A stretch of DNA of 64,000 nt, from IMG/VR virus record IMGVR_UViG_3300046787_000286, positions 1 to 64,000 of that record; one strand, given 5' to 3'. Made by a program: the position numbers and the translations under genes. The notes beneath the pieces were generated by a model. That model searched no databases and was not told the origin of the DNA. It was given only the letters and a program-made list of their open reading frames with translations. Below, in pieces: positions 4,201 to 63,600 of the stretch. Positions within the stretch are counted from its first letter, which is position 1. Every line of letters starts with the position of its first letter.

Positions 4201-7200
4201 CTACAACTATTGTAATCAATACTGTTGACGAGTTTGGTGGCATCGGTAGTAACATTGAAGTTGATGCATTAAGCAATCTAACAAGCAAATATGGATTCTA
4301 TCAAGTCCCTGTTAACTTAGAAAACAACCCATTAAACGGGAACAGTAAAACATTCACACTAGGTACAGTTAGATCTCACTATGAGTCTATTGGCGAAAAC
4401 CTTAAAGGGCTGACAGGCAAGATCAACGGTGCTAACAACAGCCGTGACCTAGGCAATATTATTCCCTACGGCGAAAATATCTTGCAACAAAGTTCGCCAA
4501 TGACTTTAGCTGGCTATTTTATGCGTAGCCAAGAATATAATATTTTTGCCTCGCTCGAATACAACAGCCGCGAATATGAAAAATTTAAAGCACAGTTGTT
4601 AGATACTGTAACTCGTAACGATTACACGAACTACACTATTCCTAACATGCTTACAGCAGCAATCAATGACATTAATACTGGCAAGATTGAAACATCGCCA
4701 TTTTACTGGTCAGACATGTTGCCAGCTAGTTCTATCTACAGCCAGAATGTTGTAAAAATTACTCCTATCAGTACAAATGTGTTTGATTTGTCGACCACTT
4801 ACGACTTTACAAGTTCGAATTACAAAGGATTGTTAGTTTACTTGAACGATACGCTGCTAACGATCGACAAAGATTACACTGTATCTTCGGATAGTCCTCA
4901 ATTAACTATCACAGCTACATTAGCTGTTGGTAATACTGTTACTATTAGAGAGTATCCTACTACCAATGGTAATTTTGTTCCAAACACTCCGACGAAAATG
5001 GGATTGTATCCTGCGTACAGACCACGCATTTATGTAGACACAAACTACGTAAATCCTCAAACAATGATTCTAGGACACGACGGCAGTCTAACTGTTGCGT
5101 TTGGTGATTTCCGTGACGAACTGTTGTTGGAGTTCGAAACTCGTATTTTTAATAACTTAAAAGTCCATAGTAAGATTCCAGTAACCGCAGTTGATGTTAT
5201 TCCTGGACAATTTAGAACAACTGATTATACACTAAACGAAATTAATACTATCTTGTCAACTGACTTCTTGAGTTGGATTGGCTGGAACAAACTTAACTAC
5301 CAGTCACAAGATTACGTTTCAACAAATGAGTTTACATGGAATTATAGTGCATGCGGTAACAAATTAACTGGACCGAATGAAGTTCCTGTGCCAGTTGGCG
5401 CATGGAGAGGGTTGTATCAATTCTTCTACGATACCACTAGCCCAAACACTACACCTTGGGAAATGCTTGGATTCAGTATTGAGCCAACATGGTGGGAAGA
5501 CGTATATGGTGCAGCACCATACACTAGCGACAACTTAGTTCTATGGGATGACCTTGCAGCCGGTAAAGTTGCAGATCCTTCTGGCGAGTATTACTTGCCG
5601 CAGTATGCTCGCCCACGTTTAACTGAAGTTATCCCAACTGGAACCGAGGGCGAATTGTTAAGCCCGTTCGACAGTGTAGTCGGCACTTATGATTCAAGTC
5701 AATTCCAAAAATCTTGGGCAGTTGGCGACGAAGGTCCAGTTGAGTACTCATGGAGAAGAAGTTCTAGCTATCCATTTGCAGTAATGCGTTTGTTGGCACT
5801 AACTCGTCCTGCAGAATTCTTCTCATTGTTTGCTGACAGAGATCTTTATAAGTTTGATACTGATTACAACCAGTATCTTTATAATGGACGTTATAGACTT
5901 GATGCTAACGGTGTTCAGGTATATGGCCTGGGTACAAGTAAAGCTAGTTTTATTAACTGGATTGTTGACTATAACCAGCAAACAGGAGTACACACTTCTG
6001 AAAATTTAACAAAAGATCTTGCAAGCCTTGACGTTCGCTTGTGCTATCGTGTTGGTGCGTTTACTGATAAACAATACTTAAAGATTTACACAGAGAAGTC
6101 TAGTCCGAATAGTTTGAATTCTAGCTTGTTGCTGCCAGACGAAAGTTATAGCTTGATGCTATACAAAAATCAACCGTTTGAACGCATAATATACAGTTCT
6201 GTTATTTTCCAAATGGTAGAAAATGGTTATGCAGTTTACGGTTATAGCATTACTGCGCCATATTTTAATACATTGGTTAGTAAAACTTACGGCACAAAAA
6301 CTACAATTAGTGCAGGCGGCCAAAGTATAACTGTTCCTACTCAGTACACAGATGAAGTTGTGCAGGTGCCGTACGGATATGTGTTTACTAACAAAACTGT
6401 AGTGATTGACTTCTTGTTAAGTTACGGTGCGTTACTCGAACAACAAGGTGTAGTGTTCAGCGACAGAGAAAATGGATACACTCTCAACTGGAATCAGATG
6501 GCTCAGGAATTTTTATATTGGGCTAATCAAGGATGGGAGCCAGGCGCAGTTATTAACCTTAATCCAACTGCATTTAGCTTAACTGCTATTCAGCCACAAG
6601 CTATTATTGATAGCATTGTGGCACAAACTCCTGAGAACAGTATACTTGACCAAAATAGATCTACTGTGCCTGTGCGCAACTTAGTAGTAGATCGTAACGA
6701 AAATGTCTTCAAGGTGTCGACATTAAATGAACAAACTATTAGCTATCTAGATCTTAAATTTACAAATTACGAAAGTATTGTTGTATTAGATAATATTAGT
6801 GTCTTCAATGATTTAATTTACGAACCTGTAACAGGCGCACGCCAAAGCAGAATTAACGTCACTGCTATTATTAATTCTGACTGGAACGGTCAATTAGATG
6901 CACAAGGATTTATTTTCAATAACAGTGCAACCATTGAGCCATGGTCTTCGTTGAAAAAATATGCCAAGGGCGAAATTGTTACCTATAAGAACAACTACTG
7001 GGCAGCGCAAACTATTGTGCAACCTAAGTTAGAATTTGATTACAGCGATTGGGTCAAGAGCGACTATACAAAAATTCAAAAGGGATTGCTGCAAAACTTA
7101 CCGAACCTAAGTGATCAATTGGCCAATTCTTATAACACAAATAGTGCTAACTTGGAAACAGATCAAGATTTAGTATCATTTGGGTTGATTGGATTCCGTC

Positions 7201-10200
7201 CTAGAGAATACATGTCTGCACTGAACCTTGACGACGTTAGTCAAGTTAACGTGTACAAACAATTCCTTAAGGATAAAGGAACAATTCGAAGCATACAACT
7301 GATTGGCAACGCCAAGGCAGACAAAGAAGTTGCAGAATACAGCCTTTACGAAAACTGGGCAATCCTTCGCGGAGCATACGGTGCCACTGCAAATAAGAGC
7401 TTCATTGAGTTAAGACTAAACGAAGCATTATTGTTAGCAGATCCTGCAACAATTCAAATTGTTAATGTTGGACAAGAAAGCCAGGCAGACCAGCAAATTT
7501 TATTAAGCGATTTGTGGAGACAAAGTTACAAGATCCCAACAACGGATGTATTCCCAACAACCACAACACCAATACAAGATTCTTCATTGCCTACTGCCGG
7601 CTATGTTAATCTTGACGACGTTGACATTACGGTGTTCTCGTTGGATGCTAATTTAGCATTAGCACCAGGTGTATTAAATTCTATTGGAGCAGGTACAACC
7701 ATCTGGGCTGCAAAAATTAATGCATATGATTGGGGGGTGTACCGTTGTATGCCAGTTCCTGGATCAGTGCAACAAGTAACTTCTAATTTGAATTCTACTG
7801 CGATTGTTACATTCACTGGTAAACACAATTTAGCATTAAATGATATTATTGTGATTCAAAACTTTGCTAGCAGCGTTGACGGAGTTCATCGAGTGTTATC
7901 AGTGCCATCTGCTAATACAGTAGTAATTGAAGCACCGATAACAAGAAATGTTATAGGCAGCGGCGTTGCAGTTGTTCTTAGAACCATGCGTGTTTCTCAA
8001 GCCAGTGACGTTATTAATTTAAGTTATGCCAATGAGCTTACTGCTGGTGCTAAAGCATGGGTAGACGACAACGGCAGTGGCTTATGGCAAGTGCTCGAAA
8101 AGCAAACCCCGTTCTCTCAGACAACAGTTGATTCTCTTCCATTGGATACACCTGTATACGGCGCACAATTTGGTAGTTCCGTGGCACAGGGTAATCAGAA
8201 TATTATTGCTGCTGTGGGCGCACCTGGGTATAGAACTCCTTACGAAGAGTCAACCCCAATTGGTGCAGTGTATCCTTATCTAAGAGATAATTCAAATAGA
8301 TATGCTGAGAATACTATACTTAATTTAGGAACAACTGGCACTCTTGGTTACGGCAATGCAGTTGACATTGGTTATCAAAGTTGGCTGGCAGCAGGCGCAA
8401 GTGCATCTAACAATAATATGGGGTATGCTTCGGCAGTATACCGAGCAGAAGATAGCAATTCGTTTGAACAACGACAGCTTCTAGTTGCTCCAGACCAGGA
8501 TTTTGGTAGCGGTGAATTTGGTTACTCTGTATCAGTTAGCAAAGACGAGCAATGGATGTATGTTGGCGCTCCGGGCAACAACAAAGTTTATGCATTTGCA
8601 CGTCGGGATGTAGAATTACAAGTATCTCGTCACACTACTAATGGAGTTACAAAAATTTATTCATTCACTAACGAAATTGTTATTGATCCTGAATATCCTG
8701 AACAACTTTCTGTAGTTTATAACAACAAATTGTTAACATATGGTGTTGACTATTCTGTAACTGGAACTAGTGTTGTATTGACTACATTACCTCCAGCTGA
8801 TCAGCTAGTTATTATTCAACGTAAACAAGGTCAGATACTAGATACTCAAACGTATTATGATTTAAGTCAAGATAGCACATCAGGTGCTGGTACCGGCGCA
8901 GTGTTTACAATTACAAACACACGAGGAGAATATTTTGTAACAATTTCTTCCCTAGGTGAAGACTATGTTGTCAGCGATACTGTAACATTTGATGGATCAA
9001 CCCTGGGAACAGAAAATTCTTTACCTAGTACTCCAACTACTCCTGCAAACGATTTAGTGTTAACAGTAACTGGTGTCGACGACAACGGTGGAATTACTGC
9101 ATTTACTATTAGCGGAAACGGTATAACAAACAATTATATTTTCCCTATTAATCCATATCTATATGGAATTGAAAATATTTGGTCAATGTCTGTAACAGTC
9201 AACGGAATTTTACAAAGACCGTTTATTGACTACGACTTTAATACCGACAGTGCAGAGGCGTTCGACATTGTGTTTAACACCGTGCCAGCCGCTGGTACAA
9301 ATATCGCAGTTACAGCAAAGACGCAATTTACATTTGTTGATACACTTTCTGTAACAGGGCTATCTCCGATAGATAGATTTGGTACAAGTCTCGCACAAAC
9401 AGACGGCGGAAGATTTGTTGTTGTTGGAGCATCCGATGCAAACACTACTGCTAATAAGAGCGGTGCTAGCTATGTGTTCAGCCGAGGATTTATCAAGTAC
9501 ATTATTGATGATGCGTCTCAAACAACATTTGAATTGCCAGCAGCGTTTAACAGTCCTGCGGCAGTGATCCTCAACGGACAGTATCTAACTAATTCTGCAC
9601 AGTATATCAACGGACAATATTCAATTGTTGGAACAGATGTAATCCTTAACAGTTCTGTAGTATTGAATGTTGGTGATGTGATTGAGATAGAAAATAATAT
9701 TTTCCATCTAATTCAAACTGTAGCAGCTGGGACTCCATCTGACAATGCTAAGTTTGGTAGCTCATTGGATATTTGCCCAACTAATTGTAGTCTTTACATC
9801 GGATCGCCAACTGATAGCTCAGTGCAAGCTCGAGCAGGATCAGTAGATCGATATGTAAACCAATCTAGATTATACGGAGTGATAACATCTACTAATGAGT
9901 ATCCAACCCTAGTACCAGGCGGGACTATTCTTGTTAGCGGCTTTGAAGTTACATTATCAACTCCCGAGACATGGGACTCGCTAGTAGAATACGCAAAAGG
10001 TGATTTTGTTATTACCAATGGTGATATTTACGAAGCTATTCGAACTGTTCCTGTCCCTACACAAATCACTAATACAGATTACTGGAAAGCAAGTAGTTGG
10101 ATTGAGCTACTATCGTCAGACATTAATTCTGCAAGTTTGCCAAATATTACATCGTCGGTTAGAAACGGTCTAATGACAATCAGTGTTATTAACTCAGACG

Positions 10201-13200
10201 CTGCAACAGAATTTAATAAACTATCAGTGCTACCGGGCATTACGTCTACACTGTTTGATGATGTAGGGTTCGACGTTTATGTACATACACAAACAATCAC
10301 AAGCCCTTATCCATCTGTGAATGCAAATTTTGGCACATCTTTGGCAATATCATCTGATGCATTGACATTGATTGTAGGTGCACCGGGCGGTAACACTTAT
10401 GAGCCTGTTACATTTGACGACAACACTACTGTATTCGATGATAGAAGTACAGCGTTCTTCTCATCAGTAATTGAAGGCGGTGTAGTGTATTCATATGATA
10501 TGTTACAGAGTGCAAACTCGAGCATTGCAAATCCTGTTAAATTTGTGTTTGGACAACAAATTTATAACAGCGGAGTAGAGCCACTTGACCAATGGGGCAC
10601 TGCGGTTAGTTATGTTAGCGGTAGATTGTTAGTGGGCGCACCGGGCAGTGACCTTGGCGATAGCTCAGTGAACTACGGCAAGGTAGGTGTATTTGAAAAT
10701 ACAACAAATCGACCAGCATGGTATCCTATACATGTTCAAGAGCCCACAGCAGATGTGACGTTGTTTAACAATGTCTACATGTATAATAAGCTGCAATCAA
10801 GTAAGACATACTTCCTTGATTATATCAATCCGTTACAAGGTAAAATTCTTGGAGCCGCAAGACAGAACATTGATTTTATCGGATCAGACGACCCTGCAAA
10901 ATATAATGCAGGTCCAATGAATAACAATGGTAATTTCTGGGCAGAAGAAAATGTAGGAAAAATTTGGTGGGATATTAGATCTGCTAGATTCATTGATCCA
11001 AGTCAGAATGACATTGTCTATACAAGCCGTCGATGGGGCCAACTATTCCCAGGAAGCACAGTTGACATTTATCAATGGGTTGAAAGTGCTGTTCCTCCAG
11101 CATCATATTCTGGACAAGGTACTCCATTAAATGTCACTAGTTATACAGTTAGAACAAACTTGAACCAACAAGGTGTGTTTGTCACTAGCTATTACTTCTG
11201 GGTGTCAGGTATTGATATCATTAATACCAACGCCGGTAAAACATTAAGCACAACAGGCATCGCAAGATATATTGAAAATCCTCGTAGCTCAGGAATCTCT
11301 TACATTGCACCAATTAATTCTAGCACAATCGCTTTGTATAATTCGATAGAATACCTAAGCGCATCAGATACTATTATTAACATTGGGTTTGATAGGGAAC
11401 GTAACGATGATAATATTCATACTGAATATGAATTGATTGCACAGGATAGTCCAGATAGCTTCTTGAGTGATAATTTGTATAAAAAGTTGCAAGATAGTTT
11501 CTGTGGAGTGAATGCTGCCGGTGCCCTTGTGCCAGACGTTACGTTGAGCCCAGCCGAACGTTATGGTGTTCAGTTCCGTCCTCGACAAAGCATGTTTGTG
11601 GACAGATTTAATGCTCTTAACAATTACCTAACATATTCTAACTCAGTGTTAGCGAAGTTCCCAATTACTGAAACTCGCTCATTCATCTTGTTGAATAGTT
11701 TGGAACCTGAGCCGACTGCTGCTAGCGGAGAATGGAATAAGAGATTAAACAACATTCAAGAATTGTCATATCAAAACTTGTCAGAAGTTAACATCGGTTA
11801 CAAATATCTAATAGATTCAGACAGTAGTAACGGCGGCTTATGGACTATCTACACAGTGGTCCAGGGTACTGACTTAATTGGCGCACCTCGTTATACTCAA
11901 CTATCAAGAGTGCAAAACTATGATACAAGAAAATATTGGAGTTATATCAATTGGTTCGAAACTGGATACAACAATACACAAGTTTTAGTCGCCGAAGTTC
12001 CAATTTACGCAGACTTGGTTACAATAGAATTAACCACCCCAGTTGGCGCTAGCGTAAAAGTTACTGCCAACGCACAAAACAAGTGGGAGATCTATCAACG
12101 AATTGTTGACGGATGGACTCGTGTTGGTTTAGAAGATGGCACAATTGCGTTTAGTGATGTGTTATGGGATTATGCTGCTGGACGATTTGGATTTGACGTT
12201 GAAGTTTTTGATGTGCAATACTTTGACTCGGAGCCAGTTATTGAAACTAGAAAAATCATCCAAGCAATTAACGAAGAATTGTTCATTGACGATTTAGCAA
12301 TTTATCGTAACAAAGCATTGATCTTGGCATTTAACTACATGCTGAGTGAGTTTGAAGCACCTGAGTGGTTAACTAAGACCAGTCTGATCGATGTAAATCA
12401 CAAGATTCGTGAGTTGTTGCCGTTCCAAATCTTCCGACAAGATAACCAAGACTTTGTGCTTGATTACATTCAAGAAGTTAAACCTTACCATGTACAAATT
12501 AGAGAATTTAATTTAACATACAATGGCCAGGACTTATATGATGGGCAAATGACTGACTTTGATGTGCCTGCATATTATGATCGCTTGCTTGATATTCCTC
12601 GTTACATTAGTCCAGTATTATTGCCATACACAAAGAGTGGCGCAGTAGGAACAGGAACTCCAAACGGGGATTCTGATGCATATAGCGACGCTGAAGTTTG
12701 GACACGTTGGCCTTGGAGTCAATGGTATACAAATTATCTGTTAAGCATTGAAAGTGTTAACATGATTGCCGGCGGCACAGGATACACAGAACCACCGTTA
12801 GTTACTGTGACTGGTGAGTGCGAGGTACCGGCTGAGCTGGAAGCAGTGATTAACAGTGCCGGAGCAGTTGTTGCAATCAATGTCATCGAACCGGGTGTTG
12901 GTTATTCAACTACAGCAGTGATTACCATTACTGAAGGTAACGGAGTCGGTGCAAGAGCTTATGCAGTTATGGGCAACCAACTGGTAAGATCTATTAAGAC
13001 TACTATCAAATATGATCGTTGCGAGTATACTTCGACTATTGTTAACTGGGAAGCGAACACAACTTATGCTGCCGGTAGTTTAGTACGTTACGAAGACCAA
13101 GTTTGGGAAGCAGATTCTAGTATTACAACCGCAACATTTGATCCAGATTTTTGGACACAAGTCCCGGCTAATATATTAGGTGCAGCTGATCGTGTACAAG

Positions 13201-15566
13201 GTTACTATGCGCCTACTGTTAATCAGCCAGGTGTGCAACTTCCATTAGTAATCGACGGAGTAGAATATCCTGGGGTGCAAGTTACAGGTCCAGACTTTAA
13301 TCAGAATACTGGTTTTGACATTGGAAACTTTGACATCAACCCATACGATAACTTGTCATACGGTCCAGAAGGACGCCCTACATATGATCCTGCTATCCTT
13401 GATGCAATTTATGAAAGTCCATACTTAGACCCGTTCCTTGGCACTCGTGCTACAGACGTTAATGTTGACGGCGGAGCATACGTTGATACATTCTCGAGCT
13501 TTGCTCCTGAAGAATTAGTTCCTGGCGCAGAGTTTGATACGCTTGATATGCGCATCTACACACGCCCTGGCTCAGATTGGGCAGCGGACGGACACGGGTT
13601 TAATTCGTATTCGTTTGCAATTGAAGTAAGTGAGCTTCCGCAGACTTACAATTTTGAATCGTGGTACACTTATGTTCCGTATCTAGTAACTGGGTTGTTA
13701 ACAAACCAAACAACCGGGGTTGAAATGCTACAAGGCATTAACTTTACTGTTAACTGGGGTGCAAAAGAGTTTACTATCACTTCAGGTTGTAATGTTGGCG
13801 ACTCACTAGTTGGCACAGCATACAGCGCAGGCGGCGGCAATCAATTGTACCGTAACAATTATGTTGGCAACGAGATTGTTTCTAACACAGTTAATGTTCC
13901 AGTATTGTTTACACAAATTCAAGAAGTTGATGTGTGGGTAAACGGTGCACCTTACACTAATGTAACTTACACCGCAGGTACAAATAATACAACTAATGTA
14001 TCGTTTGGGAACACGTTTACTAGCAGCGACTCAGTGGTTGTATATGTGCTAGGACCAACAACGCTTAACGGCACTCAGGTAAACTACAGTTGGAGTGCTC
14101 CTGTAACACAATATATTGTGGCTAACGGATCATCGTTGATATTTGATCTTGACAACAGTACAGATTATACAAACCCTGCTAACATGGTTGTTACTGTAAA
14201 TGGTGTTAGAGCAAGAACTGCCGGCGGAGTTGAATATTATGCTGACGGTAGTTCTGCATACTTGCTACCTGAACGATTGGGATTTAGCGATTCGATGGTT
14301 GCTGACAACGAAGTATTAGTTTATATCAATGATATTCCTCAAACACTTGGGTCTGACTTTATTGTAGAACCATACACTGGTGATCATCGACATGTTGTGT
14401 TTAACACAGCACCAGCCGACGGTGAGAGAATTTTGATTGCAGTTACAACAAATACTCAGGCACGTATTGACAGCGGTACTAACTTGTATTTTGATCCATC
14501 GCAAGGATTGATTCCAGTTGCGGGCGATATAATTACAGTTACTACCTGGAATGACACTCGTCAGCAAGACATTGTTACTACTGTATATGTTGGGCCAGTG
14601 CAATCGGGAGCTACTGTAACAGAAGGTTTTGACACTACAGATTATTCTCCAGCTACATTGAATAGTACTCCGGGAAGTTTTGATTACACTGCTGGTATTA
14701 TTGTTACTAACAACGAGCTATATCTGCCACGACCTGTTACAAACCCAGATCGTTTGTGGGTATCGTTAAACGGTAGAATATTGTTCTTTGGTGAAGATTA
14801 TACTATTGTAAACGACGAGATTATTTTAGCTAGAGGTGTTATTAATACCAATGACGTTGTAATGATTACTGAGTTTACAAATAGTATCAGCCCAGATGCT
14901 ATTGCGTTCCGTATATTCCAGGACATGCGTGGCGTCCAAGTAACTTTCAAAATTACACCTAACTCTACTACTGCGTTGGCGCAGACCCTCGGGGAGAATG
15001 ATGATGTGATTTATGTTGATGATGCGTCAGCTTTAGACGAACCAGAAATTACATCTAATATCTGGGGAGTATTGACTATCGGTGGCGAAAGAATTATGTA
15101 CCGAAATAGAGATATTGTTAATAACACTGTTAGCAGCCTACGTCGTGGCACTGCTGGCACTGCTATTACATCACATGAAGCAAGCACAGTTGTGTATGCA
15201 ATGGGTCGTGGTGAGGCTATGCCTACTGAATTCCAGAACTATATTGACAGCAACTACTTCTTGGGCAACGGGTCTACTGTGTCATTTGAAGCAACTAATA
15301 TTACATTCAGCGATACTGATAGTACATTAGAAGTTGATGCAGTTGAAGTTTGGGTAGGAGGTTCTAGAGTAACAAGTGGGTACACTATTACGGGGTCTAA
15401 CCCAGTTGGTGTCGAATTTGATATTGCACCCGCAGCCGGTACCGGGATTACTATTTTGGTACGTCGCGGTGTAAATTGGTATCAACCTGGTGTGAATACC
15501 CCAAGTGATGGTGTTGCGTTGCAAGATACTAACACTCCTGCGGCAAGGTTCTTACGCGGGCTGTAA
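1239..15566 (+). CDS. Giant (4775 aa) baseplate/tail-associated structural protein with FG-GAP-like blades, CBM5/12-like and Ig-like repeats
   Basis: N-terminus 'RTVEFLPEIFQT..NKQFLAATLDQL' is typical of wedge (gp7-like) proteins. Seven 'FG.S.A...L.VGAPG'-type motifs and three 'W....Y..G..V...G..W.A' motifs. Thr/Val/Asn-rich beta composition. Confidence 0.75.
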   Translation: MARVRTVEFLPEIFQTSTNKQFLAATLDQLVQEPAFTKIQGFVGRRVGPGVNPSDEYIKEETDVRTNYQLEPGVVIKKYDTNEVRDVITYPGITDAMGLAGGFTDNSDRLYTSDYYTWDPFIDLDKFSNFSQYYWIPAGPNSVDVFAGQLPLTDTFDVVRENGVYTFGGISGDNPVIRLVRGGSYNFNVAQNSKETVNYRVTNDGISSFVIDYQNNPTLTLVRGNTYVFNLTRNEYAFYIKTDDTLGTTNQYTSGVTNNGSVNGRVTFTVPQDAPDTLYYCNDVQRNLKGTLNIVDAVPGTGPGFWIQVDPGVDGKLISTPNISSRDVFGVVNNGEDLGTVTFNVPLATDQNFYYSLTNINSSLTTNGVDLVTSLKFNQINNVFVDQFLIQNPTGIDGITNLDGKTVIFLEQQSDAEAGGWEVTTQFDPLVESSDNNGRLGSYDTTLFDQTTIINPAQRYSVWQISYVTTEGGNKYLKLNPVIAVNNLEKFSILSGTAYSSTEWFKNSVGVFEQVPLLTAVKTTLYYQDATDPEIFGRIQIVDEQNAGTLDVNEIIGKKNYTSPNGVVFTNGLKITFIGNVEPASYQNNSYYIEGVGTAIKLLPVGNFVTPETYTQSATIPYDSSAYDVGNFDASLNQPLVPDYLTINRASLDLNPWTRSNRWFHIDVINASAEYNNTVPVLDNNFRAKRPIIEFRAGTRLFDFGTEGKEPVDIIDFAATDALSTINGSVGYSIDGYSFINGSRVIFAADADPAVRNKIYVVEFITPDTVAPLIAEPIINLVPASDADIKAEQTVVCLSGIIQQGKSFYFDGVEWLESQQKTQTNQAPLFNVYDINGVSLGDRITYPSTNFVGSRLFSYAVGTGTDDTVLGFPLKYLSLSNVGDIVFDNNLYSDQFTYTKDSVSNTEFISQGSVREYSTRIAYVKEIGWQPAAAKSAARQQFSFTYDGSPLVLDIPVDTTSVFPALQIYVSGIFIDPNDYTYTVTNDTTTIVINTVDEFGGIGSNIEVDALSNLTSKYGFYQVPVNLENNPLNGNSKTFTLGTVRSHYESIGENLKGLTGKINGANNSRDLGNIIPYGENILQQSSPMTLAGYFMRSQEYNIFASLEYNSREYEKFKAQLLDTVTRNDYTNYTIPNMLTAAINDINTGKIETSPFYWSDMLPASSIYSQNVVKITPISTNVFDLSTTYDFTSSNYKGLLVYLNDTLLTIDKDYTVSSDSPQLTITATLAVGNTVTIREYPTTNGNFVPNTPTKMGLYPAYRPRIYVDTNYVNPQTMILGHDGSLTVAFGDFRDELLLEFETRIFNNLKVHSKIPVTAVDVIPGQFRTTDYTLNEINTILSTDFLSWIGWNKLNYQSQDYVSTNEFTWNYSACGNKLTGPNEVPVPVGAWRGLYQFFYDTTSPNTTPWEMLGFSIEPTWWEDVYGAAPYTSDNLVLWDDLAAGKVADPSGEYYLPQYARPRLTEVIPTGTEGELLSPFDSVVGTYDSSQFQKSWAVGDEGPVEYSWRRSSSYPFAVMRLLALTRPAEFFSLFADRDLYKFDTDYNQYLYNGRYRLDANGVQVYGLGTSKASFINWIVDYNQQTGVHTSENLTKDLASLDVRLCYRVGAFTDKQYLKIYTEKSSPNSLNSSLLLPDESYSLMLYKNQPFERIIYSSVIFQMVENGYAVYGYSITAPYFNTLVSKTYGTKTTISAGGQSITVPTQYTDEVVQVPYGYVFTNKTVVIDFLLSYGALLEQQGVVFSDRENGYTLNWNQMAQEFLYWANQGWEPGAVINLNPTAFSLTAIQPQAIIDSIVAQTPENSILDQNRSTVPVRNLVVDRNENVFKVSTLNEQTISYLDLKFTNYESIVVLDNISVFNDLIYEPVTGARQSRINVTAIINSDWNGQLDAQGFIFNNSATIEPWSSLKKYAKGEIVTYKNNYWAAQTIVQPKLEFDYSDWVKSDYTKIQKGLLQNLPNLSDQLANSYNTNSANLETDQDLVSFGLIGFRPREYMSALNLDDVSQVNVYKQFLKDKGTIRSIQLIGNAKADKEVAEYSLYENWAILRGAYGATANKSFIELRLNEALLLADPATIQIVNVGQESQADQQILLSDLWRQSYKIPTTDVFPTTTTPIQDSSLPTAGYVNLDDVDITVFSLDANLALAPGVLNSIGAGTTIWAAKINAYDWGVYRCMPVPGSVQQVTSNLNSTAIVTFTGKHNLALNDIIVIQNFASSVDGVHRVLSVPSANTVVIEAPITRNVIGSGVAVVLRTMRVSQASDVINLSYANELTAGAKAWVDDNGSGLWQVLEKQTPFSQTTVDSLPLDTPVYGAQFGSSVAQGNQNIIAAVGAPGYRTPYEESTPIGAVYPYLRDNSNRYAENTILNLGTTGTLGYGNAVDIGYQSWLAAGASASNNNMGYASAVYRAEDSNSFEQRQLLVAPDQDFGSGEFGYSVSVSKDEQWMYVGAPGNNKVYAFARRDVELQVSRHTTNGVTKIYSFTNEIVIDPEYPEQLSVVYNNKLLTYGVDYSVTGTSVVLTTLPPADQLVIIQRKQGQILDTQTYYDLSQDSTSGAGTGAVFTITNTRGEYFVTISSLGEDYVVSDTVTFDGSTLGTENSLPSTPTTPANDLVLTVTGVDDNGGITAFTISGNGITNNYIFPINPYLYGIENIWSMSVTVNGILQRPFIDYDFNTDSAEAFDIVFNTVPAAGTNIAVTAKTQFTFVDTLSVTGLSPIDRFGTSLAQTDGGRFVVVGASDANTTANKSGASYVFSRGFIKYIIDDASQTTFELPAAFNSPAAVILNGQYLTNSAQYINGQYSIVGTDVILNSSVVLNVGDVIEIENNIFHLIQTVAAGTPSDNAKFGSSLDICPTNCSLYIGSPTDSSVQARAGSVDRYVNQSRLYGVITSTNEYPTLVPGGTILVSGFEVTLSTPETWDSLVEYAKGDFVITNGDIYEAIRTVPVPTQITNTDYWKASSWIELLSSDINSASLPNITSSVRNGLMTISVINSDAATEFNKLSVLPGITSTLFDDVGFDVYVHTQTITSPYPSVNANFGTSLAISSDALTLIVGAPGGNTYEPVTFDDNTTVFDDRSTAFFSSVIEGGVVYSYDMLQSANSSIANPVKFVFGQQIYNSGVEPLDQWGTAVSYVSGRLLVGAPGSDLGDSSVNYGKVGVFENTTNRPAWYPIHVQEPTADVTLFNNVYMYNKLQSSKTYFLDYINPLQGKILGAARQNIDFIGSDDPAKYNAGPMNNNGNFWAEENVGKIWWDIRSARFIDPSQNDIVYTSRRWGQLFPGSTVDIYQWVESAVPPASYSGQGTPLNVTSYTVRTNLNQQGVFVTSYYFWVSGIDIINTNAGKTLSTTGIARYIENPRSSGISYIAPINSSTIALYNSIEYLSASDTIINIGFDRERNDDNIHTEYELIAQDSPDSFLSDNLYKKLQDSFCGVNAAGALVPDVTLSPAERYGVQFRPRQSMFVDRFNALNNYLTYSNSVLAKFPITETRSFILLNSLEPEPTAASGEWNKRLNNIQELSYQNLSEVNIGYKYLIDSDSSNGGLWTIYTVVQGTDLIGAPRYTQLSRVQNYDTRKYWSYINWFETGYNNTQVLVAEVPIYADLVTIELTTPVGASVKVTANAQNKWEIYQRIVDGWTRVGLEDGTIAFSDVLWDYAAGRFGFDVEVFDVQYFDSEPVIETRKIIQAINEELFIDDLAIYRNKALILAFNYMLSEFEAPEWLTKTSLIDVNHKIRELLPFQIFRQDNQDFVLDYIQEVKPYHVQIREFNLTYNGQDLYDGQMTDFDVPAYYDRLLDIPRYISPVLLPYTKSGAVGTGTPNGDSDAYSDAEVWTRWPWSQWYTNYLLSIESVNMIAGGTGYTEPPLVTVTGECEVPAELEAVINSAGAVVAINVIEPGVGYSTTAVITITEGNGVGARAYAVMGNQLVRSIKTTIKYDRCEYTSTIVNWEANTTYAAGSLVRYEDQVWEADSSITTATFDPDFWTQVPANILGAADRVQGYYAPTVNQPGVQLPLVIDGVEYPGVQVTGPDFNQNTGFDIGNFDINPYDNLSYGPEGRPTYDPAILDAIYESPYLDPFLGTRATDVNVDGGAYVDTFSSFAPEELVPGAEFDTLDMRIYTRPGSDWAADGHGFNSYSFAIEVSELPQTYNFESWYTYVPYLVTGLLTNQTTGVEMLQGINFTVNWGAKEFTITSGCNVGDSLVGTAYSAGGGNQLYRNNYVGNEIVSNTVNVPVLFTQIQEVDVWVNGAPYTNVTYTAGTNNTTNVSFGNTFTSSDSVVVYVLGPTTLNGTQVNYSWSAPVTQYIVANGSSLIFDLDNSTDYTNPANMVVTVNGVRARTAGGVEYYADGSSAYLLPERLGFSDSMVADNEVLVYINDIPQTLGSDFIVEPYTGDHRHVVFNTAPADGERILIAVTTNTQARIDSGTNLYFDPSQGLIPVAGDIITVTTWNDTRQQDIVTTVYVGPVQSGATVTEGFDTTDYSPATLNSTPGSFDYTAGIIVTNNELYLPRPVTNPDRLWVSLNGRILFFGEDYTIVNDEIILARGVINTNDVVMITEFTNSISPDAIAFRIFQDMRGVQVTFKITPNSTTALAQTLGENDDVIYVDDASALDEPEITSNIWGVLTIGGERIMYRNRDIVNNTVSSLRRGTAGTAITSHEASTVVYAMGRGEAMPTEFQNYIDSNYFLGNGSTVSFEATNITFSDTDSTLEVDAVEVWVGGSRVTSGYTITGSNPVGVEFDIAPAAGTGITILVRRGVNWYQPGVNTPSDGVALQDTNTPAARFLRGL

Positions 15567-47155: not shown

Positions 47156-47184
47156 ATTATAGCAAATCAATAGTTTTTAGTCAA
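47156..47184 (-). promoter_or_regulatory. sigma70 promoter TTGACT-17-TATAAT
   Basis: Near-consensus, with TGC before the -10. Confidence 0.8.
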
Positions 47185-47515: not shown

Positions 47516-47544
47516 ATTATAGCAAATCGGGCATTATTGGTCAA
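47516..47544 (-). promoter_or_regulatory. sigma70 promoter TTGACC-17-TATAAT
   Basis: Part of a 52-bp exact repeat shared with 50636-50687. Confidence 0.8.
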
Positions 47545-50656: not shown

Positions 50657-50685
50657 ATTATAGCAAATCGGGCATTATTGGTCAA
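50657..50685 (-). promoter_or_regulatory. sigma70 promoter TTGACC-17-TATAAT
   Basis: Identical to 47516-47544. Confidence 0.8.
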
Positions 50686-54794: not shown

Positions 54795-54823
54795 ATTATA
54801 GCAAAAGTTGATTTATTGGTCAA
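54795..54823 (-). promoter_or_regulatory. sigma70 promoter TTGACC-17-TATAAT
   Basis: Upstream of the MoxR gene. Confidence 0.8.
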
Positions 54824-57658: not shown

Positions 57659-58174
57659 TCAACTGTTTAGAACACGAGCAACACTAGTGATTACACTAGC
57701 AATCCGCCCGATATCGCGCAACTGCTCAACTGTGTAACCTTCTTGTTTTAAAGTCTCGTAGTGAGCCTTTACACAAAAATGGCACTTGCCTACAATACTC
57801 GCTGCCAAGCTGTATGCTTCGAATCGAGCTTTAGTTGTGCCGCCATGTGAACTAATAGCGTTCATGCGTAACTGGGCCGGCAAACCTTTTAAGTTCTCGT
57901 CATCGGCCATTTCGACATAGGGGTACCAGATGTTGTTTTGTGCCATGATCGAGCCGGCTGTTAGTGCAGCATCACGCTCTTTTGTGTCAACAATGCTGCT
58001 ACTAATAAAAGTAATCAGTTTGCCGTTACCTGTTGCAAAGGCCGCAGCCAGTGCAATTGCTTCTGCTTCCTCTGGTGCCAAGGTACTGCGTTTGATCACA
58101 GCGTCAAGATTTAACTTGGTGTCCTTAGCATACTCAGGAAGACCTTCTTTAAGTTGGTCTACCCATGCAGTCAT
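57659..58174 (-). CDS. ahpD: Alkyl hydroperoxidase AhpD
   Basis: 'YAKDTKLNL', 'MAQNNIWY', 'KCHFCVKAH' CxxC; TAATG-coupled to ahpC. Confidence 0.9.
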   Translation of the reverse strand: MTAWVDQLKEGLPEYAKDTKLNLDAVIKRSTLAPEEAEAIALAAAFATGNGKLITFISSSIVDTKERDAALTAGSIMAQNNIWYPYVEMADDENLKGLPAQLRMNAISSHGGTTKARFEAYSLAASIVGKCHFCVKAHYETLKQEGYTVEQLRDIGRIASVITSVARVLNS

Positions 58175-58713
58175 TACAGAGTCTCCCCGCCTACTGTACG
58201 GTTACAAGCGCAAAGTTCGCCAGTCTGCAATGCGTCAAGAATACGCAGAGTTTCTTCTGGGCTACGGCCAACGTCCAAGTTGTTGACAGTAACGTGTTGG
58301 ATAACGTTGTCCGGGTCAACGATGAATGTTGCGCGAAGTGCCGCACCTGCTGGCGCATAGAACACACCTAGTTGTTCGACCAAGCTCAACTCACCACGCT
58401 GTGTATCAGCAAACTGAGTGTGAGTAATTTTCTTCAAATCACTGTGTGCCATTTGCCATGCTGTCTTACAGAACTCGTTGTCTGTTGAACCTGTTAGCAA
58501 TACTGCATCGCGATCAGCAAAGTCACCAGTCAACTTATCGTAGGCCACAATTTCAGTTGGGCAAACGAATGTGAAGTCTTTTGGATAGAACACGATTACT
58601 TTCCATTTGCCTTCGAAGCTTTGGTCTGTAATTGTGAAGTATGCGTCTTCTGGTTGGCCTGGCTTAACTCCTGTGACTGCGAACGCTGTTAGTTTATCAC
58701 CGATTGTTTTCAT
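58174..58713 (-). CDS. ahpC: Peroxiredoxin AhpC
   Basis: 'FYPKDFTFVCPTE' peroxidatic Cys, 'RATFIVDP', 'GELCACNR'. Confidence 0.95.
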   Translation of the reverse strand: MKTIGDKLTAFAVTGVKPGQPEDAYFTITDQSFEGKWKVIVFYPKDFTFVCPTEIVAYDKLTGDFADRDAVLLTGSTDNEFCKTAWQMAHSDLKKITHTQFADTQRGELSLVEQLGVFYAPAGAALRATFIVDPDNVIQHVTVNNLDVGRSPEETLRILDALQTGELCACNRTVGGETL

Positions 58714-60131: not shown

Positions 60132-60205
60132 TGGATGCGGGAGACAGATTCGAACTGCCGATGCACCTGGCTTATGAGACCGGTGTGGTGGCCACCCTTC
60201 CCGCG
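60132..60205 (-). tRNA. tRNA-Met(CAT), initiator-like but atypical
   Basis: C1:A72 mismatch, CTCATAA loop, GGCAG-TTCGAAT-CTGTC T arm, CCA; reduced D arm and U73. Confidence 0.75.
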
Positions 60206-61250: not shown

Positions 61251-62158
61251 TGGCGGACTGAGAATACATCCTAACCTAGTAACACCTCGGACATTATTAC
61301 AAACCTTGCGAGTCTGCTTTCTTCCGACTTCCACTAAAACCATATTGCTATGTATTCTAGTCTGTTACCAGTATCGCCGTTTTTAAAGACAGGCAGTAGT
61401 CTTGTCGTCACATGCTACTCTACACCATCTATCCCGTTGACCTTTAGAGCCATTCACTGTCGCTAAACAGCTACGAAACTTCCAGTATAAACAGATTTCA
61501 CCTTGCGAGTTACGTCTGACTGTATTGCCTTGCGGCTACAGCATTAGATACTTTTCACACATGACCGAGTCAGTCTTTGCATTTTAATCGTTAGCGGGAG
61601 TTGAACCCGCAGTCGACTCCTTAACAGGGAGTTGGCCTACCATTAGCCTATAACAACCTACTGCGATGTGCTGACTCAGTTGCTTCATACTCTTTTGGAA
61701 TACAAAATACAACACACCACGTTCCTTTTGTCTTGCGAACTACTCAGACGTCTTTTGCGATATGTGTCGGGTCTCGGCTTTCGCGTACCTCCACTTACCA
61801 CTCAAACTGCATACGAGCCCTAGGGTGCAACCCCTCGGACAAATACACTACCCTTTCTCATACCAATTAACTGGACTGGTTTCGTTGTGAAGTCAGCACC
61901 ACCTGTTACTTTCCATCTACTCAAGTTCCCCTTGATGCAATCTCAGGCTTGTAAGCAAACGTTCTTTCCACAACATCCAGCGTCATTGTTACAACCACCG
62001 GTCTTATCAGTGATCGCTCCCTTGCAGGAGTGAGCAGGCTTGCCTAAGTGAACTATTTTTAGTAGCGGAGTTATGTAGGCATACCTCCTTTGGCTGTGTC
62101 ACCACAGTTATTCTTCACTAGATAGCAAGCTACCTAGTAGGACATTAAGCTGCCCTTA
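61251..62158 (-). ncRNA. Large ornate ncRNA, GOLLD-like
   Basis: ~900 nt ORF-free, behind a perfect sigma70 promoter, next to tRNAs; many GNRA (GCAA/GAAA)-capped hairpins; embedded tRNA in a helix tip; boundaries approximate. Confidence 0.7.
61586..61657 (-). tRNA. tRNA-Asn(GTT) embedded in the large ncRNA, no encoded CCA
   Basis: GTTGTTA/TAACGAT acceptor, GGCT-AATGGTA-GGCC D arm, ACTCC-CTGTTAA-GGAGT, GCGGG-TTCAACT-CCCGC. Confidence 0.8.
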
Positions 62159-62164
62159 TATTCT

Positions 62165-62193
62165 ATTATAACATTGATTGCTGCACTTGTCAA
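62165..62193 (-). promoter_or_regulatory. Consensus sigma70 promoter TTGACA-17-TATAAT
   Basis: Perfect consensus; points into the large ncRNA/tRNA array. Confidence 0.88.
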
Positions 62194-62210
62194 CCATCAA
62201 CATTACCAAA

Positions 62211-62325
62211 TCTGTAAACAACTGCACACTTACAGGACTCGAACCTGACGACCAGGGCAATAGCCCTAGCTATGAATCCAACCATATCAGCGTGGCCTAC
62301 GCCTTTATGTGCATGTGTTTAAAGA
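62211..62325 (-). ncRNA. 115-nt tRNA-like small RNA without CCA
   Basis: Ends pair (TCTTTAAACA..TGCACA / TGTGCA..TGTTTACAGA); internal hairpins GCGT/ACGC and CTAGGGC/GCCCTGG; T arm CAGG-TTCGAGT-CCTG; has its own promoter. Confidence 0.55.
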
Positions 62326-62347
62326 CTTTGTTACTGTCTAAGTATCT

Positions 62348-62376
62348 ATTATAGCAAATTACGATATACTTGTCAA
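62348..62376 (-). promoter_or_regulatory. Consensus sigma70 promoter TTGACA-17-TATAAT
   Basis: Perfect consensus with TGC extension; drives the 115-nt element. Confidence 0.88.
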
Positions 62377-62406
62377 CTACTTTTTTGCATTTTGGGTAAA
62401 GTGTTA

Positions 62407-62414
62407 TATAAATA
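62407..62414 (+). promoter_or_regulatory. T4-type late promoter TATAAATA
   Basis: Exact T4 late consensus, 7 nt before ATG 62422. Confidence 0.7.
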
Positions 62415-62421
62415 TTCCACT

Positions 62422-63600
62422 ATGAATAAATCTAAAACTTTTTGTATAGCCACTCATGTTTGTATGGCAGTACAAAACGAAGTTGACTACTGTTGTTGCA
62501 ACGCCAACAAAGAAAGTTGGAAAACAAATGACCACCAAGTCATGCGTGTAAACGAACACTCTCCCAAACAAGCCTGGAACAGCTATTCTCGTAAAATAAT
62601 AAGAGAAGTATTAGATAATGGGCAACAACATCATTCGTGCCAGAAGTGTTGGGACATTGAGGCTGCTGGTAGCATAAGTCAACGTATGACATTGAATAAT
62701 ATGTTTGTTGATGTTGAGTTACTCAACGACCAACCGCAGATTATAATTATAAAACCCGGAAATACTTGTAATTTTGCATGCCGAATGTGCAATCCTGAAA
62801 CTAGCTCAAGCTGGTATTCGGATGCATACAAATTAGAAAAATCTACTTTGCCCTTTTCCGAATACACTCGTAAGTTTGAAACTATACGAAACAGTTTTAA
62901 CCGTGATAATGAAAATTTTTGGAATACCTTCAAACAGTGGTTGCCAACTATAAAGTACATTGACATTTACGGCGGAGAACCATTCTTAGCTCCTGCATTG
63001 TTTGATCTACTAGAGCACGGAGTTAACATAGGTGCTGCAAAAGAAGTTTCTTTGCAACTGCATACAAATGCATCAATCATGAATCAACATTATCTTGATA
63101 TTTTAAGTCAGTACAAAAAAGTTACCTGTAAAGTAAGTATTGATTCAAGTGATCCGAAGAAAAACGATTACATACGGCATCAAGGAAACTTTGATAAAAC
63201 AATAGCTAATGCAAAATTATTCAAAACATTTTTTGATCAACATAAAAATTTAAATTTTGGAGTAACATACACACTTACGCCGTTGAATGTGTTCCATGTG
63301 GATCAAGATAAAGAACTTATTAGCGAACTATTAGAATTACCTAAAATAGATGTAAACATAGTAACTACACCAGAATACGACATACGTCACTTACCGATTC
63401 CAGTTAAGGACTTTCTAATTAATAATATTAACGATAGCTCGGTGAACAATTTTCTAAAACAAACTATACCAGGTTGCGACATTGAGTGGCCAAAATTCTG
63501 TAAAGTAACTGATGAGTTAGATGCCATACGCAACCAAAGTTTTGCCGAAACATTCCCCGAATGGTGGGAAATGCTCAAACCATACTGGGTGTCTCAATGA
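62422..63600 (+). CDS. Radical SAM protein 8 (same family as the island paralogues)
   Basis: CNFACRMC, 'YGGEP', FCIATH..YCCC and CQKCW; start ATG 62422. Confidence 0.9.
   Translation: MNKSKTFCIATHVCMAVQNEVDYCCCNANKESWKTNDHQVMRVNEHSPKQAWNSYSRKIIREVLDNGQQHHSCQKCWDIEAAGSISQRMTLNNMFVDVELLNDQPQIIIIKPGNTCNFACRMCNPETSSSWYSDAYKLEKSTLPFSEYTRKFETIRNSFNRDNENFWNTFKQWLPTIKYIDIYGGEPFLAPALFDLLEHGVNIGAAKEVSLQLHTNASIMNQHYLDILSQYKKVTCKVSIDSSDPKKNDYIRHQGNFDKTIANAKLFKTFFDQHKNLNFGVTYTLTPLNVFHVDQDKELISELLELPKIDVNIVTTPEYDIRHLPIPVKDFLINNINDSSVNNFLKQTIPGCDIEWPKFCKVTDELDAIRNQSFAETFPEWWEMLKPYWVSQ

What the first reader, a model, noticed from the sequence alone, without database searches (positions are those of the whole stretch)
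62211..62325. Independent 115-nt tRNA-mimic RNA with its own consensus promoter
Seen: sandwiched between two perfect sigma70 promoters (62348-62376 and 62165-62193). The 5' and 3' ends form a long bulged stem. The interior has 3-4 hairpins ending in a canonical T arm (CAGG-TTCGAGT-CCTG), but there is no anticodon loop of standard geometry and no CCA. Inference: a tRNA-like decoy or regulator, for example bait for host anticodon nucleases or tRNA-sensing defences, or a Y-RNA-like RNA. Unlike YrlA, the T arm is 3' rather than permuted.
Basis: partly seen in the sequence, partly recalled or inferred. Interest (0 to 1): 0.72.

Follow-up and report, generated by a model that had tools for sequence, protein, structure and literature searches.

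The report
Phage tRNA-shaped RNA beside GOLLD
A freshwater jumbo phage carries, just upstream of its giant GOLLD RNA gene, a small promoter-driven gene for a tRNA-shaped RNA that cannot decode codons; it is conserved in two related phages, but its job is unknown.

Summary
Two perfect TTGACA-17-TATAAT promoters bracket a 115-140 nt segment. It folds into a D arm, a short anticodon-like hairpin, a long variable hairpin and a canonical T arm, closed by a 19-pair bulged helix. ARAGORN calls it tRNA-??? with a 6-nt loop. The Rfam tRNA model does not match, and there is no CCA.

The window is part of a 214-kb jumbo-phage contig. The second promoter drives a GOLLD RNA of about 870-900 nt, which is abundant in a metatranscriptome. 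The element sits inside the phage's tRNA island.

Two other phage contigs (L128, L129) hold the same unit. The promoter hexamers are kept. The terminal-helix strands are almost invariant (98-100%), against 84-86% for GOLLD. The interior is only 67-77% identical, yet it keeps all hairpins with different sequences. None of the three copies has a 7-nt loop.

This points to a selected, non-decoding tRNA-like ncRNA of a new small family, not a decaying pseudogene. The decoy or Y-RNA reading remains untested. The phage records hold no Ro60 or RtcB gene, and there is no evidence of a discrete transcript. The closest known analogue is T4 species 1 RNA.

The parts
62348..62376 (-). Promoter P1: TTGACA-17-TGcTATAAT, perfect sigma-70 consensus with an extended -10. 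The transcript probably starts near 62343-62339.
   Evidence: The hexamers are kept in L128 and L129 (TTGACA/TACAAT) while the spacer is only 50-63% identical to ours. Further variant contigs in runs X1, X25 and X26 show TTGACA-17-TAyAAT with different spacers (loose ends at 62350/62353).
62306..62347 (-). Leader and 5' strand of the terminal helix (AGATACTTAGACAGTAACAAAGTCTTTAAACACATGCACAT). It is nearly invariant among the three phages.
   Evidence: 41/42 and 42/42 identical, against 84-86% in GOLLD. It pairs with 62205-62230. Its first 10 nt equal the start of the GOLLD transcript in relatives that lack the element.
62224..62312 (-). tRNA-like core: acceptor-like inner helix, D arm, anticodon-like hairpin (6-nt loop UUGGAU), 8-bp variable hairpin, and T arm CAGG-UUCGAGU-CCUG.
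   Evidence: ARAGORN tRNA-???. MFE fold. The structure-guided alignment of three homologues recovers all helices. The hypervariable middle part folds better than shuffles in all three.
62205..62230 (-). 3' strand of the terminal helix (AGTGTGCAGTTGTTTACAGATTTGG). No NCCA end and no terminator follow it.
   Evidence: The first 27 nt of the trailer are identical in the three loci. 19 of 19 helix pairs are standard and never vary. The terminator scan found no site on this strand here.
62165..62193 (-). Promoter P2: TTGACA-17-TGtTATAAT. This is the promoter of the GOLLD RNA, not a second boundary of the element.
   Evidence: GOLLD homology with relatives begins at its -10. Metatranscriptome depth covers 61266-62119.
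61255..62158 (-). Neighbouring GOLLD RNA gene of about 870-900 nt, with tRNA-Asn (61586-61657) embedded in its linker. It gives the context and is not part of the tRNA-like RNA.
   Evidence: Rfam RF02032, 197.6 bits, E = 3e-54, over 61255-61720. Word depth in RNA run X15 reaches about 3800 over 61266-62119.

Best explanation
The segment is a real, selected gene for a non-decoding tRNA-like small RNA, and it belongs to a new small family.

Context. It lies in the tRNA island of a freshwater jumbo myovirus, directly upstream of the phage's GOLLD RNA gene. It appears to have arisen by insertion of a tRNA-like sequence together with a duplicated copy of the GOLLD promoter.

Shown.
- The consensus promoter and the fold are present.
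- The promoter hexamers, the terminal helix, the D stem and the T arm are conserved in three phages.
- The two middle hairpins are rewritten in sequence but kept as hairpins.
- A 7-nt anticodon loop, a conserved U33, a free acceptor end and CCA are all absent.

Inferred.
- Host RNA polymerase transcribes the element from P1.
- The RNA folds into a cloverleaf-like core closed by a bulged helix of about 20 bp. This helix either protects the ends or is cut by a double-strand-specific or tRNA-processing nuclease, which frees the element from read-through into GOLLD.
- The product acts in trans as a structural tRNA mimic. The invariant helix is a sequence-specific binding site for a protein, and the T-arm/D-stem module engages a factor that recognises tRNA shape. 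The result is either titration (a decoy) or tethering (as Y RNAs do).

The identity of the partner is unknown.
For: - Promoters are real and enriched on this strand.
- Homologous units occur in two other phage contigs of 252-300 kb, L128 and L129.
- Segment identities: leader 98-100%; paired trailer 27/27; interior 67-77%; GOLLD 84-86%; promoter spacers 50-88%. The -35 hexamers are identical, and the -10 is TATAAT here and TACAAT in L128 and L129. With GOLLD-like divergence, about 11 changes would be expected in the 68 helix-forming nt. One indel is seen.
- The variable hairpin is AGGGC/GCCCU, CACUGCC/GGCAGUG or UGCCCC/GGAGCA in the three copies. The anticodon-like hairpin is UAUGG/UCAUA, UAGA/UCUA or GAUA/UAUU. 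RNAalifold on the structure-guided alignment returns all five helices.
- The hypervariable part folds better than shuffles in each copy, p = 0.001, 0.032 and 0.017.
- The fifth T-stem pair runs U.U, G.U and G-C. The D-stem closing pair changes from G.U to G-C.
- It is not a tRNA by the Rfam models, and it lacks CCA although the phage's regular tRNA genes that were aligned encode it.
- A second, unrelated tRNA-like RNA of the same phage (69699-69789) also has a 6-nt loop and a long bulged terminal helix. That helix shows compensatory changes in its homologue in G017. Such RNAs are therefore a recurring feature of these tRNA islands.
Against: - No transcript evidence. RNA run X15 covers GOLLD deeply but has zero depth over 62120-62424. 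However, the phages active in that sample may lack the element, and small structured RNAs are often lost from such libraries.
- There are only three homologues. The terminal helix never varies, so it carries no covariation support. Its invariance could also reflect a constraint at the DNA level.
- The hairpin comparisons rest on an alignment I made by structure, which is partly circular.
- No terminator separates the element from GOLLD, so it may be only a leader.
- No candidate partner protein was found. TROVE and RtcB are absent from the window's own record, and TROVE, RNase III and the CCA-adding enzyme are absent from the three element-bearing records.
- GOLLD-bearing relatives L124-L127, and 16 more distant relatives, do without it.
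Confidence: 0.55

Rival explanations
1. It is a cis-acting leader or processing module of GOLLD. P1 is the ancestral GOLLD promoter, and the tRNA-like fold is a punctuation signal that RNase P, RNase Z or RNase III cuts off a longer P1 precursor. It would have no role of its own, like the tRNAs that flank GOLLD and are embedded in it.
For: - No terminator lies between the element and P2.
- The first 10 transcribed nt after P1 (AGATACTTAG) equal the start of the GOLLD transcript in relatives L124, L125 and L127, which have a single promoter.
- GOLLD genes sit in tRNA arrays and carry embedded tRNAs.
Against: - P2 keeps consensus hexamers in all three phages, so GOLLD does not need P1.
- RNA depth stops near 62119 with nothing upstream.
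- A mere processing handle would not need a sequence-invariant 20-bp helix alongside rewritten but preserved inner hairpins.
Confidence: 0.2
2. It is a decaying tRNA pseudogene, for example a former class II tRNA of Ser or Leu type. It would persist by chance in a tRNA island, and the promoter would simply be one of many in the region.
For: - ARAGORN sees a defective tRNA with a 6-nt loop, a 4-bp T stem and an acceptor mismatch.
- The interior evolves faster than its surroundings.
- The D loop has lost G18G19 in L128 and L129.
- The element is absent from most relatives.
Against: - The promoter hexamers are conserved while the spacers diverge.
- The flanks are far more conserved than GOLLD itself.
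- The hairpins are retained with unrelated sequences and fold significantly better than shuffles.
- It resembles no other tRNA of this phage or of its relatives.
Confidence: 0.12
3. It is an unconventional but working tRNA: allo-tRNA-like with an 8/4 or 9/4 acceptor branch, or a frameshift or doublet-decoding tRNA. It would be matured by RNase P and 3' trimming, with CCA added by the host.
For: - It has a class II shape and a 4-bp T stem in this copy.
- Irregular 8/4 tRNA-Ser and tRNA-His are reported in tRNA clusters of alphaproteobacterial phages (PMC5389517).
- The weak best Rfam hit is tRNA-Sec.
Against: - The loop is 6, 6 and 5 nt in the three homologues, and U33 is not kept.
- The ARAGORN acceptor register is broken in L128 and L129. 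In the conserved register, 1-2 extra nt separate the acceptor from the T stem.
- It has no CCA, although the phage's other tRNA genes that were aligned encode it.
- No phage CCA-adding enzyme was found.
- ARAGORN does not call the L128 copy.
Confidence: 0.04
4. It is a Y-RNA-like RNA. The conserved bulged helix would bind a Ro60/Rsr ring protein of the host, and the tRNA-like module would recruit an exonuclease or tRNA enzymes.
For: - It shows the conserved-helix, variable-interior pattern typical of Y RNAs.
- It has the same module order as D. radiodurans Yrn1: terminal helix at the acceptor position, then D, stem-loop and T (PMC4201824).
Against: - No TROVE gene in G000, G017 or G018, and no RtcB gene in G000.
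- No GNCGAAN0-1G or GGUCCGA motif.
- No Rfam Y-RNA hit.
- Published YrlA RNAs lie within 4 kb of rsr.
Confidence: 0.06

Closest known systems
Phage T4 species 1 RNA (rnaC, 139 nt), a small stable RNA of the T4 tRNA cluster
   Same: - It is encoded among the tRNA genes of a T4-type myovirus.
- It is about 140 nt long.
- It has a canonical T arm (CCGGG-UUCGAAU-CCCGG) near the 3' end, 5'/3' terminal pairing and extra hairpins in between.
- It is not a decoding tRNA, and the T4 record annotates it only as a small, stable RNA.
   Different: - There is no sequence or model similarity: R1 gives 11 bits, on the T arm only.
- The T4 RNA lies at the end of a tRNA run, not next to GOLLD, and the record annotates no promoter of its own.
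- Its terminal helix is short.
Bacterial Y RNAs (YrlA, Yrn1) bound by Ro60/Rsr
   Same: - A long terminal helix formed by the 5' and 3' ends, plus a tRNA-like module with a T arm.
- A conserved helix and a variable interior.
- Also found in some phages (PMC4201824).
   Different: - No neighbouring TROVE gene.
- No Ro-binding motif.
- YrlA has the order T, acceptor-like stem, D. Here the order is D, hairpin, variable hairpin, T.
Irregular or allo-tRNAs (8/4, 9/3) of bacteria and alphaproteobacterial phages (Mukai et al. 2017, PMC5389517)
   Same: - Class II shape and a shortened T stem in this copy.
- Occurrence in phage tRNA clusters.
- Some members were proposed to be regulatory ncRNAs.
   Different: - By the paper's definition, those RNAs have a 12-bp acceptor branch, and some of them work in translation.
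- This element has 5-6-nt loops, a closed end and no CCA.
tRNAs and pseudo-tRNAs embedded in or flanking GOLLD RNA
   Same: - Physical linkage to GOLLD inside a tRNA array.
- A pseudo-tRNA with upstream promoters has been described inside a mycobacterial GOLLD gene, without detectable expression (PMC6582537).
   Different: - This element lies outside the GOLLD RNA, upstream of its promoter, and has its own consensus promoter.
- The tRNA embedded in this GOLLD is a normal tRNA-Asn at 64 bits.

Membership tests
Canonical tRNA (Rfam RF00005) | Score at or above the family's gathering score (29 bits) | tested here: not met
   No tRNA hit at E<=10 in either the 5.5-kb or the 161-nt search. Five neighbouring tRNAs score 47-64 bits.
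Canonical tRNA (Rfam RF00005) | 7-nt anticodon loop with U33 | tested here: not met
   The loops are UUGGAU (6), GGUGGA (6) and UGUGG (5) in the three homologues. The base before UGG is U, G and G.
Canonical tRNA (Rfam RF00005) | 7-bp acceptor stem ending in a free discriminator plus CCA | tested here: not met
   The acceptor-like pairs continue into a 19-pair helix. The 3' side reads GUGUGCAGUUG. The phage's regular tRNA genes that were aligned end in CCA.
Canonical tRNA (Rfam RF00005) | T arm with the UUCRANY loop | tested here: met
   CAGG-UUCGAGU-CCUG here, with UUCGAAU and UUCAAGU in the homologues.
tRNA-Sec (RF01852) and allo-tRNA (8/4, 9/3) | Model score; a 12-13-bp acceptor branch without mismatches; a 7-nt loop | tested here: not met
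   15.5 bits against a gathering score of 47. The 8-9-position registers contain 1-2 mismatches, by reading the sequences. The loops are not 7 nt.
Bacterial Y RNA (YrlA/Yrn1) | A Ro60/TROVE gene within about 4 kb on the same strand | tested here: not met
   No TROVE match in G000, G017 or G018. These records are 62-81% complete, and the host genome is unknown.
Bacterial Y RNA (YrlA/Yrn1) | GNCGAAN0-1G or GGUCCGA Ro-binding motif in the terminal helix | tested here: not met
   A regex search of the three elements found none.
Bacterial Y RNA (YrlA/Yrn1) | Binding to Rsr | not testable with these tools
   This needs a pull-down or EMSA.
GOLLD RNA (RF02032) | Lies within the modelled and transcribed GOLLD RNA | tested here: not met
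   The model match is 61255-61720. GOLLD homology with relatives starts at the P2 -10. RNA depth ends near 62119.
Phage tRNA-cluster small stable RNAs (T4 species 1 type; no formal model) | Encoded in a phage tRNA cluster, with a T arm near the 3' end, terminal pairing, and no decoding function | tested here: met
   This is an architectural resemblance only; there is no homology.
Phage tRNA-cluster small stable RNAs (T4 species 1 type; no formal model) | Accumulates as a stable small RNA | tested here: inconclusive
   Zero depth in RNA run X15. But the element-bearing phage may be absent from that sample, and short structured RNAs are poorly captured.

The most novel reading that the evidence does not exclude
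The element may be a fast-evolving tRNA mimic that works together with the GOLLD nanocage RNA or against a host factor that senses tRNA.

In this reading, the invariant bulged helix docks a protein. The rewritten inner arms, whose hairpin loop keeps only a UGG (complementary to the tRNA 3' CCA), are under arms-race selection. This would be the first case of a phage RNA decoy or adaptor built on a tRNA scaffold and genetically coupled to GOLLD.
Probability: 0.15. Interest if true: 0.8.

Novelty: new variant of a known kind. Interest (0 to 1): 0.5.

Why it matters
The functions of GOLLD RNA and of the odd RNAs in phage tRNA islands (such as T4 species 1 and 2) are still unknown.

This locus offers a compact unit: a consensus-promoter-driven tRNA-shaped RNA directly coupled to a highly expressed GOLLD gene. 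Its conservation pattern is clear, with an invariant helix and arms that are rewritten in sequence but preserved in structure.

If the RNA is stable, it gives a handle for finding the protein or RNA partner of a tRNA mimic in jumbo phages. It would also allow a test of whether GOLLD cages deal with tRNA-shaped cargo.

If it turns out to be only a processing leader, it still documents how GOLLD genes gain tandem promoters.

Tried and rejected
- BLAST of the element against GenBank phages found nothing, and nothing in 16 relatives sharing about 82% DNA polymerase identity.
- GOLLD is absent from 12 of those relatives. ARAGORN on their tRNA arrays found no '???' tRNA.
- Loop-based patterns found nothing in IMG/VR. 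In JGI metagenomes they gave only 22 unrelated hits. The flank pattern found nothing in GTDB genomes.
- Homologues were reached only by using the loose ends of variant contigs from read laying as a search pattern, and then by flank patterns.
- Searching the protein database with the spurious 58-aa ORF that spans the element, to fish out variant contigs, found nothing.
- Gene conversion from another tRNA is rejected. The interior matches other sequences only at the T arm.
- Derivation from tRNA-Ser or tRNA-Leu of this phage or its relatives is rejected. No alignment is better than generic tRNA similarity.
- A replication-origin reading of the tandem promoters is rejected. There is no GC-skew turn at 62 kb.
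- Specific base-pairing of the element's loops with GOLLD is rejected. The best duplexes fall at inconsistent places in the three phages.
- A MITE or repeat reading is rejected. There is one copy per genome, always at the same locus.
- A coding reading is rejected. The interior lengths are 76, 77 and 79 nt, which break any reading frame.

Full report
**What is there.** The finding lies on the minus strand.
- Two sites match TTGACA-17-TATAAT at 12 of 12 positions, both with TG before the -10: 62376->62348 (P1) and 62193->62165 (P2).
- Near-consensus promoters are enriched in the window. There are 6 with at most 1 mismatch against 0.7 expected from shuffles, and all are on the minus strand. Perfect or near-perfect ones also precede other RNA genes of the genome.
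- Between P1 and P2, ARAGORN calls 62312..62224 as 'tRNA-?(Pro|Ser)(gg)'. This is an 89-nt class II shape with D arm GGCG/UAGGCCA/CGCU, a 5-bp stem closing a 6-nt loop UUGGAU, a long variable hairpin, a 4-bp T stem with loop UUCGAGU, and an A.A mismatch in the acceptor.
- The Rfam tRNA model does not match, even at E<=10. The only weak hit is tRNA-Sec, at 15.5 bits against a gathering score of 47.
- The MFE fold of 62343-62205 closes the cloverleaf with a bulged helix of 7+6+6 (+2) pairs, -45.9 kcal/mol, z = -2.9.
- There is no CCA, although the phage's regular tRNA genes that were aligned end in CCA.

- The window is the first 64 kb of a 214-kb IMG/VR virus contig.
- Its DNA polymerase is 52% identical to Sinorhizobium phage Phosso and 46% to Agrobacterium phage Atu_ph07. 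About 43% matches go to GAP32/121Q-type jumbo phages.
- ARAGORN regular tRNA genes, two '???' tRNAs and a permuted tmRNA in the genome. All lie on the minus strand between 59 and 77 kb.
- Directly downstream of P2 lies a GOLLD RNA: RF02032, 197.6 bits, 61255-61720, with tRNA-Asn embedded.
- In a freshwater metatranscriptome (X15), assembled RNA covers 61266-62119 at word depths up to about 3800. Depth is zero over 62120-62424.
- P2 is therefore the GOLLD promoter, and GOLLD here is about 870-900 nt.
- The element is a separate unit upstream of it. No terminator-like site on its strand lies in between.

**Relatives.**
- Sixteen contigs of phages with 81-88% DNA polymerase identity lack the element. 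The 12 of them that were searched also lack GOLLD.
- Four IMG/VR contigs carry close GOLLD homologues at 88-97%.
- In L124, L125 and L127, a single promoter is followed directly by AGATAC(T/A)TAGGGCAG. This is the GOLLD start, and no tRNA-like element is present. The stored stretch of L126 ends before that point.
- Variant contigs in SRA runs showed the element with different flanks. Using their loose ends as a pattern recovered L128 (a 300-kb contig). A flank pattern then recovered L129 (252 kb).
- A covariance model built from the three copies finds no further copy in 32 related phage records. It finds only an 11-bit match, limited to the T arm, in the T4 tRNA region.

**Conservation pattern.**

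| Segment | Identity among the three loci |
|---|---|
| P1 and P2 -35 hexamers | identical |
| -10 hexamers | TATAAT here, TACAAT in L128 and L129 |
| Promoter spacers | 50-88% |
| 41-42-nt leader | 98-100% |
| First 27 nt of the trailer | 100% |
| 76-79-nt interior | 67-77% |
| Neighbouring GOLLD | 84-86% |

- At GOLLD-like divergence, about 11 changes would be expected in the 68 nt that form the terminal helix. One indel is observed, roughly P ~ 1e-5 by my own estimate.
- Inside, the D stem (GGCG/CGCY) and the T arm are kept. The fifth T pair is U.U, G.U and G-C.
- The D loop changes from UAGGCCA to CCGUACA.
- The anticodon-like hairpin is UAUGG-UUGGAU-UCAUA, UAGA-GGUGGA-UCUA or GAUA-UGUGG-UAUU.
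- The variable hairpin has three unrelated sequences, with 8, 9 (one mismatch) and 7 pairs.
- RNAalifold on a structure-guided alignment returns all five helices.
- The hypervariable middle part folds better than its shuffles in each copy: p = 0.001, 0.032 and 0.017.
- The terminal helix never varies, so it has no covariation support.
- The only sequence kept in the anticodon-like loop is UGG. The loop is never 7 nt, and the base before UGG is U, G and G.

**Origin.** The first ten transcribed bases after P1 (AGATACTTAG) are those of the GOLLD transcript in relatives without the element. The unit therefore looks like an insertion of a tRNA-like sequence plus a duplicated promoter at the 5' edge of GOLLD. 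The interior matches no other tRNA of this phage or of its relatives.

**A second case in the same phage.**
- ARAGORN's other '???' call is at genome 69699-69789, outside the window. It has a Leu-like body, a 6-nt loop GUUAUA, no CCA and a long bulged terminal helix.
- Its homologue in G017, the phage of L128, keeps the 6-nt loop (GUUAUG) and the T arm. It lacks the variable arm.
- That homologue shows compensatory changes in the terminal helix: GUAG/CUAC becomes GCGG/CCGC, and GAGCUC/GAGCUU becomes GAACUC/GAGUUU.
- Closed-end tRNA-like RNAs are therefore a recurring, selected component of these tRNA islands.

**Interpretation.** The data favour a real, non-decoding tRNA-like ncRNA gene over a decaying pseudogene.
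- The promoter is kept.
- The flanks are more conserved than a constrained neighbouring RNA.
- The hairpins are preserved despite sequence turnover.

How it works is inferred, not shown. I think the most likely model is a trans-acting tRNA mimic. Its invariant bulged helix would be a sequence-specific protein site or nuclease-processing site, and its T-arm/D-stem module would engage a factor that recognises tRNA shape.

The main rival is a cis leader or processing handle of GOLLD. This fits the lack of a terminator and the origin of P1.

Bait for anticodon nucleases is unlikely, because no copy has a true anticodon loop.

The Y-RNA reading has the right pattern but fails its testable membership criteria:
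- no TROVE gene in the three phage records, and no RtcB gene in the window's own record;
- no Ro-binding motif.

No phage RNase III or CCA-adding enzyme was found either.

**Comparison with known RNAs.**
- The closest analogue in a cultured phage is T4 species 1 RNA (rnaC). It is 139 nt, lies in the tRNA cluster, and has a canonical T arm near the 3' end, terminal pairing and extra hairpins. The T4 record annotates it only as a small, stable RNA. The resemblance is architectural only.
- Irregular 8/4 tRNAs of alphaproteobacterial phages (PMC5389517) and the pseudo-tRNA inside a mycobacterial GOLLD gene (PMC6582537) are related themes.
- Published work proposes that GOLLD nanocages may deal with phage tRNAs (bioRxiv 10.1101/2024.12.08.627333; PMC12990946). 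This makes the linkage worth testing, but I found no consistent complementarity between the element's loops and GOLLD.

**Limits.**
- There are three homologues only.
- The hairpin alignment was made by hand.
- No usable RNA evidence exists for the element.
- The host is unknown.
- The variant contigs seen could not be retrieved as sequence.

Noticed in passing
window 61255-62158 (-): A full GOLLD RNA gene (RF02032, 197.6 bits) with tRNA-Asn embedded in its linker, driven by the perfect promoter at 62193-62165. Many sequence variants are very abundant in a freshwater metatranscriptome, with depth up to about 3800.
   Followed up: partly
genome 69699-69789 (-), = L003:5699-5789; homologue G017:295324-295474 (L131): A second tRNA-like RNA with a 6-nt loop (GUUAUR), no CCA, a 5' hairpin and a long bulged terminal helix. 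The helix shows compensatory changes between the two phages. The variable arm is present in one copy and absent in the other.
   Followed up: partly
L092:17558-17649; L125:6413-6504; L126:11143-11234; L128:8511-8602; L127 about 988-1080: A 92-nt class II (long variable arm) tRNA with anticodon UAU and an encoded CCA recurs in related jumbo phages. In L127 it lies directly upstream of the GOLLD promoter. A rare tRNA-Ile(UAU) was also reported in mycobacteria that carry tRNA arrays with GOLLD (PMC6582537). Its amino-acid identity is unclear.
   Followed up: no
L128:6963-7099 (+): Another sequence bearing a T arm (GGCAGG-UUCGAAU-CCUGUU) that ARAGORN does not call. It lies between tRNA-Tyr and tRNA-Asp and gives a weak hit to model R1 (15.6 bits).
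   Followed up: no
window 60136-60204 (-): A weak tRNA-like match (RF00005, 19.8 bits, below the gathering score) with a CUCAUAA loop (anticodon CAU) and a shortened D arm. ARAGORN does not call it.
   Followed up: no
window 47156-47184, 47516-47544, 50657-50685, 54795-54823 (-): Four more near-consensus promoters (TTGACy-17-TGCTATAAT). Two of them are identical over all 29 nt, which suggests repeated promoter cassettes.
   Followed up: no
genome 75405-75850 (-), outside the window; also L092, L095, L096, L099, L124: Permuted (two-piece) tmRNA genes are called in this phage and its relatives. The relatives carry tags such as ANDSQFALAA. The tag predicted in this phage is unusually long and may be mis-called.
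   Followed up: no
window 62392-63600 (+): A divergently oriented 402-aa radical SAM protein (PF04055, E = 6e-12) starts right beside P1. Only one distant relative was found in IMG/VR, and it is not a neighbour of the element in L128.
   Followed up: partly
window 57659-58713 (-): A peroxiredoxin (AhpC/TSA) gene next to a CMD/AhpD-like gene, just before the tRNA island. These are probable auxiliary redox genes.
   Followed up: no
window 1239-15566 (+): A single open reading frame of 4775 aa.
   Followed up: no
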